Below, in pieces: positions 1-25,790 of a stretch of DNA of 53,501 bases; within the stretch, counting starts at the first letter, position 1, and each line of letters opens with the position of its first letter. A model generated the notes under the pieces. The model was not told where the DNA came from and ran no database searches. It saw only the letters and a list, made by a program, of their open reading frames with translations. This stretch comes from Bigelowiella natans CCMP2755 (Eukaryota > Protista > Cercozoa), in contig ADNK01002148.1 in NCBI GenBank assembly GCA_000320545.1, positions 1-53,501 on the forward strand, written 5' to 3'. A program made the translations under genes and the position numbers.

Positions 1-41
1 CCTCATATTATAGATGTATATATATATATATATATATATAC

Positions 42-81
<40 letters not shown>

Positions 82-197
82 TGATTGCTCCTACGACATG
101 GTTAGTTTTCTCTCTTTTGCACCATAATTCTCACCACTACCACCAATCACAGCTAGTAGCAAAAAGCACTGCCGCATCCATACACTTACGCTTACAC

Positions 198-265
<68 letters not shown>

Positions 266-829
266 ACAAGAAAAACTGGCATCTCTACTACCGCCGTGGT
301 CAATTCTGATGAGAGCGGGGATGGTTTGCACGCCGAGCCTGTCCTCAACTCCTGATGATGATGACGATGATGATGCGTAGCGAAAACAGGTAGAAACGAT
401 ATGAAGCAGGGGGAAACATAGAAGAAAGAGAGGGTGAAATGAAAGATAAGATCGAAGATTGTTTGAGAAGAGAGAGGTGAGTGTGTGTGTGTGTGTGTGT
501 GTGTGGTCCATGGTAGTTCTGTGGCCGCGAAAACTCATTAAGGAAGATAAAAACTCAACGGGGAACATATGGCTACGCATCTTCTTCTTCTTCTTCTTCT
601 TCTTCTTCTTCTTTCCTCCGATCTTCTCCAATTCGACTTTCACTTTCATCAGTCGTGCCCATCATCATCATCATCATCATCATCATCATTGTTGTTGTTG
701 TTGTTCTTACGATATGGATGGGTTGCATTGCCACAGAACTTCTTTTGGGAGACTGGGAGCTTGAGGAGCGCAGTACTGAGAGGAGATGATGAAGATGATG
801 ATGATGATGATAACAATAATGTAGCATAC

Positions 830-865
<36 letters not shown>

Positions 866-1210
866 CTATACGTAGACGTATTCTAGGCTATATCTTCCCC
901 CTCTTCTTCTAGTAATCTCTAAAATCTTCTAATCCCCAAAATACTACCACCACTACTGCAATATCGTCGTACCTGCTGTTAAACGCTTTGACCTTTTCCT
1001 CGACGATTGGGATGGCTCTTTCACATCCAGGACACCAACTCTTTCCTATTTATTATTATTTATTTTATTTATCACAAAGAGCGGTGAGGGAAAAACCGAA
1101 GAATCATTAACAGGATATGCTCCCAAAATGGCTGTTACTACACACCCTGAGAGCTACTATCACATTTTGTTAGTGCGAGATGTTTGTTGTCAATGATTTC
1201 TTCTGTTGTC

Positions 1211-1251
<41 letters not shown>

Positions 1252-2074
1252 ACACTGCCTTTCGTAGTTGTAGTACCATCTTTGTCTGAGATCTCCCCGT
1301 ACACGAAGACAAAGCGGTGCTTGGCCGATATTCGCAAGAAATTATCCAGTGTGTCGTCCTGGAAGGGAAGGGATGCGGTACAGACGTCGCTACTATTAAT
1401 GAACGATGTCTTGTGATTGTGTGAGGGGTGTAAAGTTACGTTTCGCGTTGGCTGCGGAGAGAGCAGCATACCTTGAATTCTGACTCTTTCACTTCCACGA
1501 TGCTTTTCATAAATCCAGTGGCCTTCACCTTCCCTCCGCTGCTGCTATTTGCCGCTTTCGAGGAGGGGGAGGAGGAGGAGGAGCTCGACGGGGTGTGAAG
1601 AGCTGAGGAAAGGTGATGATGGAACGATATAATCAAATAAATAATCAGCAACCGGTTGATGATGAGTAGGATGATCACTTGTAACGCATTCATTATCAGG
1701 AGCAGCATCCTCAAAGACGTCGTGATCGACATCATGAGGGGTTGCTTTTATCATCAACATCATCAATATCATCATCATCATCATCATCATCAACATCGTC
1801 AATATCAATATGTTGTTGTTATTTATTAGTGGCAGCACATCCATCCGGTGTTGCAGCAGTTACTTACTGCTGACCACTACCTACCTCGCTTAAGATCGTC
1901 ATATGATGCTCGGTTATTTGCCATGTGGGCCTTCACGGTGTTTCCTGATCATAATTAGCCACGAAGCAGCACGCATGCTTGTCAATGACGAGAAAGACAC
2001 ACAAGAATAAAGAGGAAGATAACAACAATTAACAGCCGGTTTCTTGCCGCAATATTGGCTTATTTTCCCTCTTC

Positions 2075-2122
<48 letters not shown>

Positions 2123-3053
2123 CCTTTCCTAACCTAAAGATTGCCTCCAGAAGAATTTCTCCTTGGTTACGCTTTCACGCTTATGCGCTGTTTTCATGTT
2201 CTCGTCAACTAATCAAAATGATGATCGCGATGATGATGTGCCGAATTACAAACAACAATGCATGATAGAGGAAAGCAGAGCCTATCAAGACGACCACTAA
2301 CTACCTTTGGATATCGGGATGTAAAGGTTCAGCCTGAAGGCCAAGATTGCACGCGAAACGAGAGCGATAAATACGGTGAAGGCCGCGTTCTCAAAGTCGG
2401 TTATTTGAACCTATAAGAGGGAGCGTGAGTGACGATCGATGCCTTTTTTGAATTGGCTACTACGCTGTGTCGCGCAACTGATAAATGAAATACTTGCAAG
2501 CAAGTACCCAGTATGTACGTACCTCCATTGTTCTAAATTCCACCCGCCAACCGATCTTATCACTTGGTGGGGGCTTGAAGCGCACAGACTGCCAATTGGT
2601 GCTCTAAGCAATATTAAAAGTGTGTGGATGATGGGGGCTATGATGGTAAGGGACATGGTTGAAGACGTATTATTAGATTATTCGTTTGGCCGGCTGGGAT
2701 CTTTCAAGGCATGCACGTTGCTGCCGTCCAACACGTATCATCATCATCACCATCACCATCATCATCACCAGTAAGCACACTCTGATAAACACGACCATCT
2801 CCCTCCCTCTCGAAATAATAATAGCGATACGTGAAGGACACGCTGTCAAGGTATTGCCGCTGCTGCCACCACCACCAGCAGCAGCAGCAGCAGCACTACC
2901 ACCGCCATCAGTAGCAGCACCTGTATGTTCTCGAAGTGGTCGACGTCCTTCGAATCATCGATCTCGATCCTGCAACAACAACAACAACAACAACGAGGAG
3001 GAGGAGGAGGAGGAGGAGGAGGAGGAGGGGGAGGGGGAAAAGGGGGCACAGGG

Positions 3054-3088
<35 letters not shown>

Positions 3089-4611
3089 GGTAATGGTGAC
3101 GATGGAGGGAGGGAGTCGTTCATCATGCTGATGATGTGGTGGTCAGCAACGACGTTATTCGGGGTAGTAGTGATGATGATGATGATGATGATGATGATGG
3201 TGAAGATGATGATGATGGTAATGATCACGAAGAGAGAGGATACTCAACATAACAGATGATGAGAAATGAAAGACAATGAAAGACAACACATATCAATGTC
3301 TTCATTTATGCTGTTGACTATTTCTCTTCCAGTACAAGTAATCCTCACCCCACCACAGCCCAAACTAGCACCTGTTCTCATAGATTACGAGGGGGTCGCG
3401 TATCCACAAATGGGAGACGTGCTTGGCCAACACCTGAAACAATCCATTTCCACAACGATCATAAATCGAAGATAAATCCTTCCCAAGATCACAGATATCA
3501 TCACCATCATCATCATCATCATCATCATCATCATGACAATATATAAATCAAGAAAGTCAGAGCACAACGCAACGAAGACAATACCGACGATTCAACTCCG
3601 AAGATGAAACAAATTGCAATCTAATACTGAGGAAAGTGAGACTTTTCGCACACCTTATCGACGCCTTCTTTGACCAACCGCTCATATGTTTTCCTACAAC
3701 AACGATGGTGGATATTAAGGCCTTTGTAGTAGTAGTAGTAGTGGGACTACTACTTCTTCGCATTATAACTAAGCTTGAATTTACATCTTCTAATAGTACT
3801 ATCTACTACTTGTCATATTCAAGATCCTCCAAATCGTTGTACTTGGACTTGAAATACCCACTTGATCTACGAAGAAGAAGAAGAAGAAGTAAGATGTGGA
3901 TGAGCTTTTGTTTTCAGCAAATTGAGTCTCACGCCATAGCTTCCTTCCTAGTGCCAACAACAATCCACAATCTATTTTACTCGGTGCTTCTTCTTTTCCT
4001 CTTCATCATCATCATTATTTCCTCCATCATGACACACACGCGTAAGCAACGATGAACTCACTCTTCTCCGATGTAGCAGCTTATCGAATCGTATCTATTG
4101 ACAGTAGTGGGGGTGGGGTGCGACAACCAAAGAATCAACGAATCCGAGCCAATCAACAACTCCTTGATCAACCAGCAAAGCATGTGTATGATTCTTCCTC
4201 TTTCACACCCCCCCCTTCCAATCCTTTCCATCTCGTAGCGGTAGGTCGTACCTGCTTTTGGCAATCTTCTGGCTCTTATCTCCATTCTCACCACGCTCTG
4301 TGATAGTTCGTGGGGTGTCATCATGATGCAAGCATTACCACCACCACCACCACCATCAATATACACCATGTGTATGTAGTAGTTCGTAATAATACCGCTC
4401 GGAGTCCTGTCGTCAACGGATTGAGAGATGACTGACCAGCGTACGTCAGTGTCTGGAGAGAAAGGTTGCATCATCGTCGAAAGGGAGGAAGGAGAAACAC
4501 TCGAATCCAAATAATTAGCTACTCAACGTTTTATTTTGCATATACATTTACGTGGGCGTGACACCAACTGTCAGGTGCGTGCTTTCAGCCGCTTTGCATG
4601 CCACCGACGTT

Positions 4612-4645
<34 letters not shown>

Positions 4646-4799
4646 CCATCATGGTCCCTTCCTCATCAGGCTAACCAAGGCTAGGATATGCTCTATTTTC
4701 CATCTATCGTTGTAGTGGCCACACACACCTGCAACCCTCCCGCGGTAAAATGGAGTTGCCGCAGAGAGCGAAAGCATGATCGGGCCTAGCACAGCTGGG

Positions 4800-4831
<32 letters not shown>

Positions 4832-4960
4832 GATTATTACAGACACCACAAAAAACGGGGCACAGCAATCATGAGGAGATCGGATTGAAGCGAAGTATGA
4901 TGAAGACGAGATGCAACGCACATCCTCATTTTCAACCCCTTCCCCCCCCCCCTCCGAGCG
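1..4960. repeat. Dense intronic microsatellites ((TA)n, (CA)n, (CTG)n, (CTT)n, (CAT)n, (GGA)n, (CAA)n); similar fields at about 19500-23720, 30560-33920, 35630-38020 and 40410-43420
   Basis: Directly visible; they account for most poly-amino-acid ORFs in the track. Confidence 0.95.
292..1358 (-). other. TRP14/TXNDC17 (DUF953)-like thioredoxin domain inside the GCLC reading frame; active site WCPGC at 1023-1037
   Basis: Exons 1358-1277, 1045-973, 775-711 and 351-292 splice to [73 protein letters not shown]. This matches the TRP14 pattern F..F.G..D..GKSWCPDC..A.P.V / R....L....VPTL. Confidence 0.85.
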
Positions 4961-6818
4961 CCGGTATTGCATTACCGAGATGGTCGTAGAGATTGCGCGC
5001 CTCTTCCAGGTTTCTCGCAAGAAACGTCACCTATCCATCGTATCATTTTGATGGTGTGAAGTTCCAAGAATCATATGTTCCGATAATATACATTATCATT
5101 GCAGCCGACTAGTGACCTGTAGGCAGCAGCATCCCATTCCGAACGCCATGGCGTCCATATGGATCTGTGATTCACCCTGCACAATGTCCACAAGCCATTT
5201 TCTTATCATGCAACGCACAGCTGATCATCGACGCCAAACTTAAGAGAAGAAACAACACCACAGAGAAACGTGTGGAAGTCTTTAGCTGAATTACCTTCTT
5301 TGTATTTTTGTCTTTAAACAAGGGCACGCGAATATCGACCTTTAAATGTATATTATGATGCATAAAGGGTCATCATGGGAGATGAGAAAAAACGACAGTT
5401 TCCGGGATAAAAATGCAGTAATGAATTTTCGCGTGTGATCACTCGATTTCTCCCTCCCCGTGTGTCTAATACATTTTTTGCGTCAAAAACTCATACATTG
5501 GCAAGAAATTTTTGCAATAATCTACATTTTATCTCTCGTATTTGTTTACCTTCGATCCTCTTCTCGTTCTGATATTTTCCGTGAGAGTTGCAAAGCGCGG
5601 ATGGGGATTGATGAGTTCGTCAGGGACATACTGAGACTTAGCTACAGGACCTACGAAGAGAAAGGTGAACGATGACTCAACAGTTGTTGTGCTTATTGCT
5701 ATGGAGGTCATAGAAATTAGGAACAAAGGGGGATGCGGTGCCGAAACCACGTATAATACCACACCAACAAACACCTTACCGTGAATAATCGTGTTTCCAC
5801 TAATACATACTTCTATTTTGATGTTAAACCTCCCATTGAAAACTGATCAAAAACATTTCGTTCAGAACAATACCGTTTGGCTTGTAGGAAGGTGTAGCGA
5901 AGTCTCCGTCTCCCATCAAAGGATACGTGGTCATTGTAGAATAAATTTCCTGGCACAAGTAATGAATACACGGCAGTCATGCACGAGACAAAGATCCTGC
6001 TCTGCTCCAGCTATCTCAGTTTCATTATTTCTACCAATAGGCATTTTATATTATAATCATCCATCCATACGACTAATCTTTACGCACCCCTGGTTTGGTA
6101 AACTTCTTGATCTTCTCTCTTCGCACGCGCATGTTCGCCTCGACACATCGCAGGTCGCGCGTGTAGCCACCGTAGGGACCACTTGGCGTAGTTTCGATCA
6201 TAAACCGTCCATACTAAGGTGCCATATTCCCCCCACAACATATCAGTGCAAGTCTCTGAGGGGAAGATCCTCAAATTGATTTTGAACGTGAATCTATATA
6301 TTTTAAAGACCTCTGGGTGGAAGATCACAGAGGGAGGACACGTGCCGCACCCTGCCTTCTCTTCGGCCTGAAATTACTTGATGTTTCAGTCACATAATCA
6401 AATAGAATAATACCAACAGTGTTTGACCTCTTTCTCTGCCTCTGCCTCCGCTACCTCCAACTTTTGGAGAATCTTGTTATAAAGTATGATTATCATGATG
6501 TAATGATGTTCCAAGACTGTCTCAAAGCGTTACCTCCGCCCCGTTTAGGGAAAGCTTTACCGCCTTCTTCCCGTCTTTTATCTCGGTTTTGACCAGGAAT
6601 CCTTCGACTTCATCCCCCCTGTAAGGCCACGATAGTTTTAAGTAAATTCAATACGTGGTCTGTTGATGTGCGAGGTACCAAAGGAAATCGAGGTCCTCCC
6701 TGCCTTGATTCTTCTTCAGTATATTCAAAAATTGTGTGATCCCATGCTCCCGAACGTAGGCCCGATGCTTCTCGCTCTGCTTCCAGCTCAAAGGCTTCCC
6801 CTTGACCAAGAACCCCAT
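292..6818 (-). CDS. GCLC: Glutamate-cysteine ligase catalytic subunit (animal/yeast type), multi-exon, with in-frame TRP14-like thioredoxin domain; 3' end lies beyond the window start
   Basis: Phase-consistent GT-AG exons from ATG 6818 give [22 protein letters not shown]|[62 protein letters not shown]|[54 protein letters not shown]|[24 protein letters not shown]|[21 protein letters not shown]. These are the conserved motifs of eukaryotic GCLC/GSH1. Confidence 0.96.
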
Positions 6819-7855
6819 GGATTTGGATTCTTAAACTTGCCGCTGAGCTTTCCTGAAATTCTGAATTCTGCAAGTCTTCGATGCTAAGTCGCTTGCATTC
6901 CGATTCTTCCCGCCATAAATTGTTTAAGATTTTAGTCCGACGACAACTCCTGATGCGTTTCGTTTTTACCGAAAATGCTCTGGCTTGGGATGTCGTACAT
7001 GCAACACAAATTTGATTTCTTTTCCGAGTTCACAGAGAAGCCTGAAATTTTTTCAGAAAAATGCTTTCTCGTTGCCGCCAGAGTCTGCTTCCTTAGGTTC
7101 CGAACTGTTTGAACAACGAAGAGCGAAGGTTGATATTCTTTGCGAACTTCTTGAGCTTGGTATTATTTTGTTTTGTACGATCCGATTTTTGTCATACGAA
7201 AGCATCTGCAAAGGAAACCGAAGGAAGCAAAAGTGTTCAGACTTTTCTGTAAGACTTTAGAATAATTTTGAATTTGGAGACAGATCGAAGTGCATGCGTT
7301 GCATCTTGTCGTCATGATAAAATGGTGTTTAGGACTTTCAAAGACTTTCTTTAGATTAATTCAAGGGCCTAAATAAGATCTTAAATTAAATCCCAACCAT
7401 TCTTCGTGGATGTATAGTGCGCGACAAAATAAAAAATTTCATACTGAGAGGAAATGAATCTTCTGCAGCCAGGAACTTCAATTCGGATTGAGATGCCGTG
7501 AAAAGAGGGAATGGCAGGATGGAATTTTTCCTCGTGGCGGTTTTTAAATTGAGGTATCATTTTGTCAGGTCGCACAACATCACTTCCCTGAGACTCCTGA
7601 TACTGCATTCGACTGCTCATCTACACGCAATCTGATTCCTGTCGAATTTGAAAAGATCTACCCTTGGGGGGGCAGGTTGGATTTGTACGAGACTGTTTCT
7701 GTACTGCAGTTTAGCCCTTTTTATCCTTACCCAATCAATAATTTGATGCAGCAGAAACTAAAAATGCTATGAAACAAATATGAAGCGGATGATCCATTAA
7801 ATAATTATTGAACAGACACCTGGGAATATCCATCTCAGAAAATTACTTGGTAATC

Positions 7856-25020: not shown

Positions 25021-25790
25021 CTTTGAGAAGTTCAATGTTCAATGTTCAATCGAACCCTGGATCTATTTTTTCATGGTGGCCGGGGTGTGTGGAACTCAGT
25101 CCATCACAATGATCCTTTCAGCTGCATCATTGGAATCACTTCATTCATTTGTCCATTCATTCACGTCAACAATGTGGGTGCATTGGAGAGCAGTGACGCG
25201 GATTTCCAATTTCCTCTGTGTTTTGTTCGAGATCACGACGTCACGATGGTGCTCATCGCACGGACGTGATGTCACACAATTTGGGTTGCACACGGTCTAG
25301 CGGTGCCCACATGTTCAGACTGAGTGATCCCTCATCACTGCCGTTGCTTCTTCAAATGGGCATCGATGCAATGCATACAACACGTGCACACCTGTGACAC
25401 GCAGCGTGAACCGTGCCAGACGAGCACTGCCAGCTAGCATGCGATTTCCCCCCCTGCCACTTGACTTCTACACTTTCTCACATGCATCTCAGGTGGGGCC
25501 ACTTGCTTGCATGAGTGGCTGCCCGTTGTTCATTCCTCTTCAGTGTCACATAGGCGTTCATTCATGCACACTAGCACGTGAGCGAACAACGATGTCACAT
25601 CGTGCACGCCATCACGCTTCTTCCACCAACTAGCCAGGTGCGCAGGCGGGCTCGTGGTTCGGGGCGGCTCTGCACAATGCCAAAACACTGTGGTGCAAAA
25701 GTGCGAAAAAACGACCATTGCTAATGAATAGACGCACGCATCCATCGTAGTAGATCTAGTAGATGCATGCATGTGAAAAAGCAAACAAGT
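25021..25790. other. TpA-depleted, CA/TG-rich intergenic tract directly downstream of the histidine phosphatase stop codon
   Basis: Hand count: 10 TA dinucleotides in 25021-25740 (4 of them in CTAG) and none in about 25066-25296, versus about 10 in the single 60-nt line 24601-24660. Confidence 0.8.

What the first reader, a model, noticed from the sequence alone, without database searches (positions are those of the whole stretch)
292..2208. Glutamate-cysteine ligase carries its own thioredoxin domain (WCPGC) spliced into the catalytic chain
Seen: after the conserved GCLC segment [25 protein letters not shown] (exon 2208-2134), six more phase-compatible GT-AG exons (1944-1885, 1602-1472, 1358-1277, 1045-973, 775-711, 351-292) continue with no stop. 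They encode a Ser-rich linker and a TRP14/TXNDC17-like domain ([29 protein letters not shown]). Known: animal GCLC is tuned by a separate modifier subunit (GCLM), plant GCL is redox-switched by disulfides, and TRP14 is a disulfide/cystine reductase with a WCPDC site. The join point matches the variable loop that precedes the conserved C-terminal segment of GCLC. Inference: the rate-limiting enzyme of glutathione synthesis here has a built-in redox module. It could sense thiol status, or reduce cystine to supply cysteine to the active site. I know of no described GCLC with this architecture, but I cannot search. Whether it is an internal insertion or a replacement of the C-terminus depends on sequence outside the window.
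Basis: partly seen in the sequence, partly recalled or inferred. Interest (0 to 1): 0.87.

Follow-up and report, generated by a model that had tools for sequence, protein, structure and literature searches.

The report
Glutathione-synthesis enzyme with built-in thioredoxin domain
In the alga Bigelowiella natans and its relatives, the first enzyme of glutathione synthesis (GCLC) carries a TRP14-type thioredoxin domain inserted in its chain; this undescribed architecture physically links glutathione synthesis to a disulfide reductase.

Summary
All seven proposed exons are real. Spliced contigs from three other studies join the same GCLC and thioredoxin exons.

The product (P0153, 850 aa) has three parts in order: the GCLC N-part, a TRP14/TXNDC17-like domain, and the GCLC C-part. 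It is therefore an internal insertion in the variable loop, not a replacement of the C-terminus. The window is the start of contig C1589. The remaining exons lie on the neighbouring contig C1590, and about 152 nt of coding sequence fall in the gap. The JGI model Bigna1/41713 stops at ..QSLG and misses the fusion.

The architecture is conserved in six chlorarachniophyte-type sequences. One is a metagenomic contig where the GCLC N-part and the thioredoxin domain form one intron-free reading frame. It is absent from 113 other GCLCs.

The active site is WCPGC or WCPSC, never the TRP14 motif WCPDC. The clade also has its own body cysteines (C97-x-x-C100 and C132) next to invariant active-site glutamates.

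Function is untested. My odds are 0.45 for a redox switch acting within the protein and 0.35 for a cystine reductase feeding the ligase. I found no paper describing this.

The parts
2134..6833 (-). Exons 1-21 of the gene: a 15-nt 5' leader, the start codon at 6818, then the GCLC N-terminal and catalytic part (aa 1-488), ending ..FFWRQSL at exon 21 (2208-2134).
   Evidence: Exact spliced alignment of transcript contig L015 to the window, with 0 mismatches and all introns GT-AG. Pfam GCS 513 bits on P0153, first stretch aa 230-501. Exon-wise PF03074 hits in the genome.
6338..6349 (-). Codons for C97-G-T-C100, in exon 4 (6367-6311). This CxxC-P motif is specific to the clade and sits just before the conserved HPEYG strand. 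C132 is at 6147-6145 in exon 5.
   Evidence: C97 is present in 6/6 fusion GCLCs and 0/113 others. C100 is in 6/6 against 10/113, and C132 in 6/6 against 0/113. The loop has low pLDDT (about 57 for aa 91-100) between helix 73-95 and strand 104-108.
1885..1944 (-). Exon 22 (aa 488-508): a helical extension leaving the GCLC body, which opens the insertion.
   Evidence: The AF2 model has helices 489-497 and 499-510. The motif (..LG.T....M..) is conserved in the other fusion proteins.
1472..1602 (-). Exon 23 (aa 508-551): the Ser-rich disordered linker, then the start of the TRP14-like domain. An in-frame ATG at 1510-1508 (..FMKSIVEV..) lies close to where free-standing TRP14 chains begin.
   Evidence: pLDDT is below 50 for aa 513-539. 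This Met is not kept in P0006 or P0155, so separate initiation is not required.
1277..1358 (-). Exon 24 (aa 552-579): first helix and strand of the thioredoxin fold.
   Evidence: The own-genome protein search matches it at E 5e-13.
973..1045 (-). Exon 25 (aa 579-603): active site W-C583-P-G-C586 (codons 1037-1023) at the start of helix 584-599.
   Evidence: PF06110 hit on this exon alone. The domain scores 51.3 bits on P0153 against a cut-off of 23.1. Helix position.
711..775 (-). Exon 26 (aa 603-625): central strand and loop of the thioredoxin domain. It is needed to keep the reading frame.
   Evidence: L015 nt 1824-1888 are 100% identical. Read laying masked this exon as repeat-flanked.
292..351 (-). 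Exon 27 (aa 625-645): cis-proline loop (..QTIPALI..). It is the last exon before the contig end at window base 1.
   Evidence: It aligns to the ..AVPTLL.. loop of human TRP14 1WOU. The transcript continues beyond it; the loose end at 292 reads ..DYFARPLAS.., as in P0153.

Best explanation
Shown: this is one gene and one mRNA, encoding one 850-aa protein. It is a eukaryotic-type glutamate-cysteine ligase catalytic subunit with a TRP14/TXNDC17-family thioredoxin-fold domain of about 130 residues. The domain, together with its disordered linkers, is inserted in the variable surface loop between ..FxWR.. and ..EEI.xG..GLIP... It is the only detectable GCLC gene and the only detectable TXNDC17-like domain in the Bigelowiella natans assembly. 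Skipping the insertion exons would break the reading frame, so every full-length ligase carries the module. The architecture is conserved across chlorarachniophytes. Inferred, and the mechanism I commit to: the tethered CxxC domain (WCPGC) works in cis as a thiol-disulfide switch on the ligase. It would exchange with the clade-specific cysteines C97-x-x-C100 (and perhaps C132), which flank the strands carrying the invariant glutamates E109 and E116. GCL activity would then follow the thioredoxin/NADPH redox state of the cytosol, an analogue of the plant GCL disulfide switch and of animal GCLM tuning. I put the architecture at about 0.97. The confidence given here is for the cis redox-switch mechanism.
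For: Architecture:
- L015 matches the window with 0 mismatches in 27 GT-AG exons.
- Its 3' part lies on the neighbouring contig C1590, on the same strand and in order.
- Spliced contigs from three other studies join GCLC and thioredoxin exons.
- Pfam gives GCS 513 bits in two stretches plus PF06110 51.3 bits.
- The AF2 model has pLDDT 87 and pTM 0.87, with a folded insert (pLDDT 81-92) between disordered linkers.
- In Foldseek the body matches yeast GCL 3IG5 (E 1.5e-45) and the insert matches human TRP14 1WOU (TM 0.77), ahead of classical thioredoxins.
- The same architecture occurs in P0005 (Norrisiella), P0154, P0155, P0278 (in a Lotharella globosa cluster), P0002 (Amorphochlora fragment) and P0006, which is a single intron-free ORF on a 30-kb metagenomic contig.
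- The six form one clade on the GCLC core with support 1.0.
- The loop is 192-216 aa in them, against a median of 30 and a maximum of 69 elsewhere.

Mechanism:
- C97, C100 and C132 are conserved in 6/6 fusion proteins and are absent or rare in 113 others.
- They sit in a flexible loop and a helix next to the invariant E109 and E116.
- The linkers are long enough for the domain to reach across the body.
- The Asp typical of TRP14 is lost in all six, giving WCPGC or WCPSC. That fits a change of substrate.
- A plant GCL precedent exists for a regulatory intramolecular disulfide (PMC6463388 abstract).
Against: The co-occurrence of the body cysteines with the insert is a single evolutionary event in one clade, so it carries little statistical weight. 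I could not read model coordinates, so the distance between C583/C586 and C97/C100 is unknown. The docking test gave no answer. TRP14 is reported not to reduce typical protein substrates of Trx1, and its best-documented substrate is free cystine (PMC11217419). That favours the rival explanation. No activity data exist.
Confidence: 0.45

Rival explanations
1. Substrate supply. The inserted TRP14-like domain, recharged by thioredoxin reductase and NADPH, reduces cystine (or cysteinyl or persulfide adducts) next to the active site. It hands cysteine to the ligase, coupling cystine reduction to the rate-limiting step of glutathione synthesis.
For: TRP14 is reported as the rate-limiting intracellular cystine reductase, upstream of glutathione synthesis (PMC11217419). 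A fusion of two enzymes of consecutive steps is the classical Rosetta-stone pattern. The domain keeps the CxxC, the cis-Pro loop and a TRP14-like fold. It is flexibly tethered.
Against: The WCPDC aspartate, described as unique and highly conserved in TRP14, is replaced in all six fusion proteins. A sulfate-assimilating alga has less obvious need for cystine import than animal cells (inference). This explanation leaves the clade-specific body cysteines unaccounted for.
Confidence: 0.35
2. The insert has another role. It could be a structural or protective module, for example one that removes glutathionyl or cysteinyl adducts from the ligase's own cysteines. It could be a docking site for partners or a stand-in for the GCLM modifier subunit. 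It could also be largely neutral passenger sequence in a tolerant loop.
For: The loop is naturally variable, 0-69 aa in other GCLCs, so it tolerates insertions. The docking test gave no support for a fixed interface (this is not evidence either way).
Against: The CxxC, the cis-Pro loop and the fold are kept in six sequences that are only 59-74% identical overall. So is a conserved C-terminal ..NQYM.. helix in some of them. A neutral passenger would decay.
Confidence: 0.15
3. Artefact. GCLC and a TXNDC17 gene are separate, either nested or adjacent, with the TRP14 product starting at the ATG at 1510. On this view the joined transcripts are read-through or assembly chimeras. This was my own first reading.
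For: The in-frame ATG at 1510 lies near the position of the TRP14 N-terminus. The official gene model ends at QSLG*. Two MMETSP cluster members are truncated at 502 and 524 aa.
Against: The GCLC C-terminal exons lie downstream of the thioredoxin exons. No stop separates the parts. Skipping the insert breaks the frame. In P0006 the two parts share one intron-free genomic ORF. The ATG is not conserved. Independent transcript assemblies agree.
Confidence: 0.02

Closest known systems
Eukaryotic GCLC (glutamate-cysteine ligase catalytic subunit, Pfam PF03074; yeast Gcl structure 3IG5)
   Same: A full catalytic body is present. Pfam scores 513 bits. The protein shares all 72 columns that are invariant in 57 GCLCs. 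The model superposes on 3IG5 (E 1.5e-45, target TM 0.80).
   Different: The variable loop between ..FxWR.. and ..EEI.. is 216 aa here, against a median of 30, and holds a folded thioredoxin domain. There is an extra CxxC-P motif and an extra Cys in the body.
TRP14 / TXNDC17 (Pfam PF06110; human 1WOU)
   Same: The best sequence and fold matches are to TRP14. The CxxC sits at a helix start, the cis-Pro loop is present, and the size is about 120-130 aa.
   Different: It is not a free 14-kDa protein but an internal domain. The active site is WCPGC or WCPSC instead of WCPDC. It has a C-terminal extension with a ..NQYM.. helix and, in some members, two further cysteines.
Plant-type GCL (GCS2 type, structure 2GWC) with regulatory intramolecular disulfides
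   Same: The possible working principle is the same: ligase activity set by a thiol-disulfide switch.
   Different: It belongs to a different GCL lineage (13% identity, target TM about 0.5; no PF04107 hit on P0153). Plants rely on free reductants, whereas here the reductase-like domain is built in.
Other glutathione and thioredoxin pathway fusions: bacterial GshF (GCL plus ATP-grasp glutathione synthetase) and flatworm thioredoxin-glutathione reductase (glutaredoxin domain plus TrxR)
   Same: These are natural fusions that join consecutive or cooperating steps of thiol metabolism in one chain.
   Different: The partner domains differ. Those are end-to-end fusions, whereas this one is an insertion inside a loop of the ligase. 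No ATP-grasp or reductase domain is present here.

Membership tests
GCLC (PF03074, eukaryotic glutamate-cysteine ligase catalytic subunit) | Profile match above the curated threshold, covering both the N- and C-terminal parts of the domain | tested here: met
   P0153 scores 513.4 bits against a cut-off of 25, in two stretches split by the insert. The precomputed domain order GCS, TXD17-like, GCS is listed on L015.
GCLC (PF03074, eukaryotic glutamate-cysteine ligase catalytic subunit) | Conserved catalytic and metal-binding residues | tested here: met
   P0153 shares all 72 invariant columns of a 57-sequence GCLC alignment, including E50, E52, E109, E116, R320, R420, E422 and R424. Their role as ligands rests on knowledge of the yeast and human enzymes and was not tested here.
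GCLC (PF03074, eukaryotic glutamate-cysteine ligase catalytic subunit) | GCL fold | tested here: met
   The AF2 model (pLDDT 87.4) against 3IG5 gives E 1.5e-45 and target TM 0.80.
GCLC (PF03074, eukaryotic glutamate-cysteine ligase catalytic subunit) | ATP-dependent ligation of glutamate and cysteine | not testable with these tools
   Needs an enzyme assay.
TRP14 / TXNDC17 (PF06110) | Profile match above the curated threshold | tested here: met
   51.3 bits against a cut-off of 23.1 on P0153, and 44.7-55.8 bits on the other fusion proteins. The best PDB sequence hits are TXNDC17/TRP14 at E 3e-7.
TRP14 / TXNDC17 (PF06110) | TRP14-like thioredoxin fold with the CxxC at a helix N-terminus and a cis-Pro loop | tested here: met
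   1WOU has target TM 0.77 and rmsd 3.0, and ranks above classical thioredoxins at 0.65 or less. C583 and C586 are at the start of helix 584-599. ..TIPAL.. aligns to ..AVPTL...
TRP14 / TXNDC17 (PF06110) | Active-site motif WCPDC with the characteristic Asp | tested here: not met
   Five sequences have WCPGC and one has WCPSC; none has WCPDC. It is therefore a divergent member of the family by profile and fold, but not a canonical TRP14.
TRP14 / TXNDC17 (PF06110) | Reduction by thioredoxin reductase; cystine reductase activity | not testable with these tools
   Needs biochemistry.
Plant-type redox-switched GCL (PF04107 / 2GWC) | Membership of the GCS2 lineage, with its CC1 and CC2 disulfides | tested here: not met
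   P0153 has no PF04107 hit. 2GWC gives only a remote fold match, with 13% identity and target TM 0.53.

The most novel reading that the evidence does not exclude
Chlorarachniophytes have turned the ligase into a self-contained redox device. Every GCLC molecule carries its own TRP14-derived reductase, which either switches the enzyme through a lineage-specific CxxC beside the active site or reduces cystine directly into the active site. Either way this would be the first natural proof, by gene fusion, that TRP14-family proteins and glutamate-cysteine ligase act as one functional unit. It could also mean that the module replaces the GCLM modifier subunit in this lineage.
Probability: 0.6. Interest if true: 0.8.

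Novelty: new variant of a known kind. Interest (0 to 1): 0.68.

Why it matters
GCL is the controlling step of glutathione synthesis. Its known controls are a separate modifier subunit in animals, intramolecular disulfides in plants, and feedback by glutathione. TRP14 was only recently shown to be the main cystine reductase that feeds this pathway (PMC11217419).

A conserved natural fusion of the two is independent evolutionary evidence that they work together. It also offers a compact system, in one polypeptide, for studying how thioredoxin-type reducing power is coupled to glutathione synthesis.

The finding also corrects the public gene model of B. natans (Bigna1/41713), which is truncated at a scaffold gap. 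It shows that this genome has no insert-free GCLC.

Tried and rejected
1. My first reading was two separate same-strand genes, with TRP14 starting at the ATG at 1510 (80%). Transcripts, gene order and orthologues rejected it.

2. Whole-genome exon-wise search with PF03074 found nothing for model positions 260-372. This was a sensitivity failure on short exons. The exons are on C1590.

3. Pattern searches for the 30-nt and 16-nt loose end past exon 292 found nothing, because that exon lies in the gap between C1590 and C1589.

4. Raw-read RNA run X21 laid only 2 reads, with about 6% of the run read, so it gave no information.

5. The search for homologous proteins with the thioredoxin domain alone (L015:1627-2019) found no word-sharing candidates. 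The origin of the inserted domain is therefore unresolved.

6. Complex prediction of the thioredoxin domain against the two GCLC parts gave no answer (score 0.00, below the mark). This is not evidence for or against docking.

7. Exon-skipping to make a canonical GCLC was considered and rejected. Exon 21 ends in phase 1 and the first C1590 exon starts in phase 0.

8. The truncated MMETSP variants P0272 and P0273 (524 and 502 aa) differ at an A-run. They look like assembly or allele variants rather than evidence for insert-free isoforms, but this is not proven.

9. Five literature searches found no description of the architecture.

The joined spliced model was never sent to any search tool as typed letters. 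Searches were made exon by exon by reference, then with the public transcript contig L015 and protein P0153. The exons were concatenated only inside local scripts to check the frame.

Full report
**What is in the sequence.** Joined, they give one open frame that runs from the GCLC segment ..[20 protein letters not shown] through a Ser-rich stretch into a CxxC domain. Taken singly, exon 2208-2134 matches Pfam GCS at positions 236-258, and exon 1045-973 matches PF06110, the TXD17-like thioredoxin domain. No GCLC C-terminal motif occurs anywhere in window bases 1-2134. The window is G000:C1589:1-53501, so the contig ends 291 bases past the last exon.

**My first reading and why it fell.** The ATG at 1510 (MKSIVEV..) lies near where free-standing TRP14 begins. 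I therefore first favoured two separate genes. The transcript evidence contradicts that.

- Read laying placed one long spliced contig from each of three studies: X1 (2076 nt), X2 (2391 nt) and X3 (2430 nt).
- Each holds GCLC exons (5872-5950, 5548-5648, 2521-2605, 2305-2408) and thioredoxin exons (1471-1555, 1276-1357, 973-1044, 292-351).
- All listed joints but one carry CT..AC ends, which is GT..AG on the minus strand. The exception (2605 to 3371) spans exon 18, which the tool masked as repeat-flanked.
- The record positions between the laid pieces add up exactly to exons 2208-2134, 1944-1885 and 1602-1472.

**The full product.**

- A phmmer search with the 35-aa exon window:2306-2410 returned long relatives.
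- A region search with one of them returned P0153, an 850-aa protein.
- Its source, transcript contig L015 (2727 nt), aligns to the window with no mismatch in 27 GT-AG exons (6833..292).
- L015 nt 2101-2727 lie in eight further exons on the end of contig C1590 (25509..22574, minus strand; C1590 ends at 25589). About 152 nt of coding sequence (aa 645-695) fall in the gap between C1590 and C1589.
- The architecture is therefore an internal insertion, not a C-terminal replacement.

**The organism and the public model.** The organism is Bigelowiella natans. The JGI model Bigna1/41713 (484 aa) ends at ..FFWRQSLG, which is the intron read-through stop, and misses the fusion.

**Domain identity.**

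- Pfam on P0153 gives GCS at 513 bits in two stretches, plus PF06110 at 51.3 bits against a cut-off of 23.1.
- The best PDB sequence matches of the insert are TXNDC17/TRP14 entries.
- An AF2 model built on a 57-sequence alignment has mean pLDDT 87.4 and pTM 0.87. The insert is folded (pLDDT 81-92) between disordered linkers at 513-539 and 669-679.
- In Foldseek the body matches yeast GCL 3IG5 (E 1.5e-45, target TM 0.80). The insert matches human TRP14 1WOU (target TM 0.77), ahead of classical thioredoxins.
- P0153 keeps all 72 columns that are invariant among 57 GCLCs.

**Distribution.**

- The same architecture is found in Norrisiella sphaerica (P0005) and in two further MMETSP transcripts (P0154, P0155).
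- It is also found in a member of a Lotharella globosa cluster (P0278) and in an Amorphochlora fragment (P0002).
- It occurs in P0006 from metagenomes. There, P0153 residues 1-667 align to one uninterrupted genomic ORF on a 30-kb contig. One intron and the GCLC C-part follow.
- On the GCLC core the six sequences form one clade with support 1.0.
- Their loop is 192-216 aa, against a median of 30 and a maximum of 69 in 113 other GCLCs. Those others include the rhizarians Plasmodiophora and Nonionella.
- The search tools list only the best hits, so fusions in more distant lineages are not excluded.

**No insert-free alternative in this genome.** In the B. natans assembly, PF03074 and the thioredoxin domain each hit only this locus. 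Skipping the insertion exons would shift the reading frame. Every full-length ligase of this organism should therefore carry the module.

**Clues to mechanism.**

- The active site is WCPGC in five sequences and WCPSC in one. It is never WCPDC, whose Asp is described as unique and conserved in TRP14 (PMC11217419).
- The clade has its own body cysteines. C97-x-x-C100-P lies directly before the HPEYG strand. C97 is in 6/6 fusion proteins against 0/113 others, and C100 in 6/6 against 10/113.
- C132 is in 6/6 against 0/113.
- These cysteines sit in a flexible loop and a helix beside the invariant E109 and E116.
- I therefore favour a tethered redox switch acting in cis (0.45) over cystine reduction for substrate supply (0.35). 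Both are inferences. The cysteine co-occurrence is one evolutionary event, and I could not read model coordinates. The docking job gave no answer.

**Novelty.** Five literature searches found no description. The sequences do sit unremarked in public transcriptome sets, with automatic Pfam labels. I rate it a new variant of known kinds: two known families joined in an undescribed way, conserved across a lineage.

Noticed in passing
window 2134-2208 and the contig start (base 1): The public JGI gene model Bigna1/41713 (P0157, 484 aa) ends at ..FFWRQSLG, which is the intron read-through stop. It is only about 80% identical to the transcript-supported protein. The model is truncated at the scaffold gap and several of its short exons are mispredicted.
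   Followed up: partly
window 1-7000: The gene is cut into very short exons: 27 exons of 33-155 nt in 6.5 kb. Nearly every intron is filled with microsatellites, (CAT)n, (AC)n, (TA)n and (CTC)n. Read laying masks these, which hid exons 18 and 26 from it.
   Followed up: no
P0272, P0273 (MMETSP members of the P0153 cluster): Two transcripts, of 524 and 502 aa, diverge inside exons 22 and 23 at an A-run and a Ser-rich stretch, and end early. They could be assembly errors, strain alleles or real truncated isoforms that lack the thioredoxin and C-terminal parts.
   Followed up: partly
P0153 aa 651-666 (in the assembly gap, not in the window): A conserved extension follows the thioredoxin core. It has ..W-C-x-D-x-F-C-V-N-Q-Y-M.., with two more cysteines in Bigelowiella, Norrisiella and the Lotharella-cluster sequence, but not in P0006. 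Its function is unknown.
   Followed up: no
hits P0169, P0199, P0201: Other unusual GCLC architectures turned up. P0169 (976 aa) carries PF03074 plus PF00923 (transaldolase). P0199 and P0201 (836 and 882 aa), the sister group of the fusion clade, are long but have no thioredoxin domain.
   Followed up: no
L011 (metagenome contig ENA ERZ23491473, 30 kb): This is an uncultured relative at 55% GC whose gene has a single intron in the part aligned, against at least 26 in B. natans. The two lineages differ strikingly in intron density.
   Followed up: no
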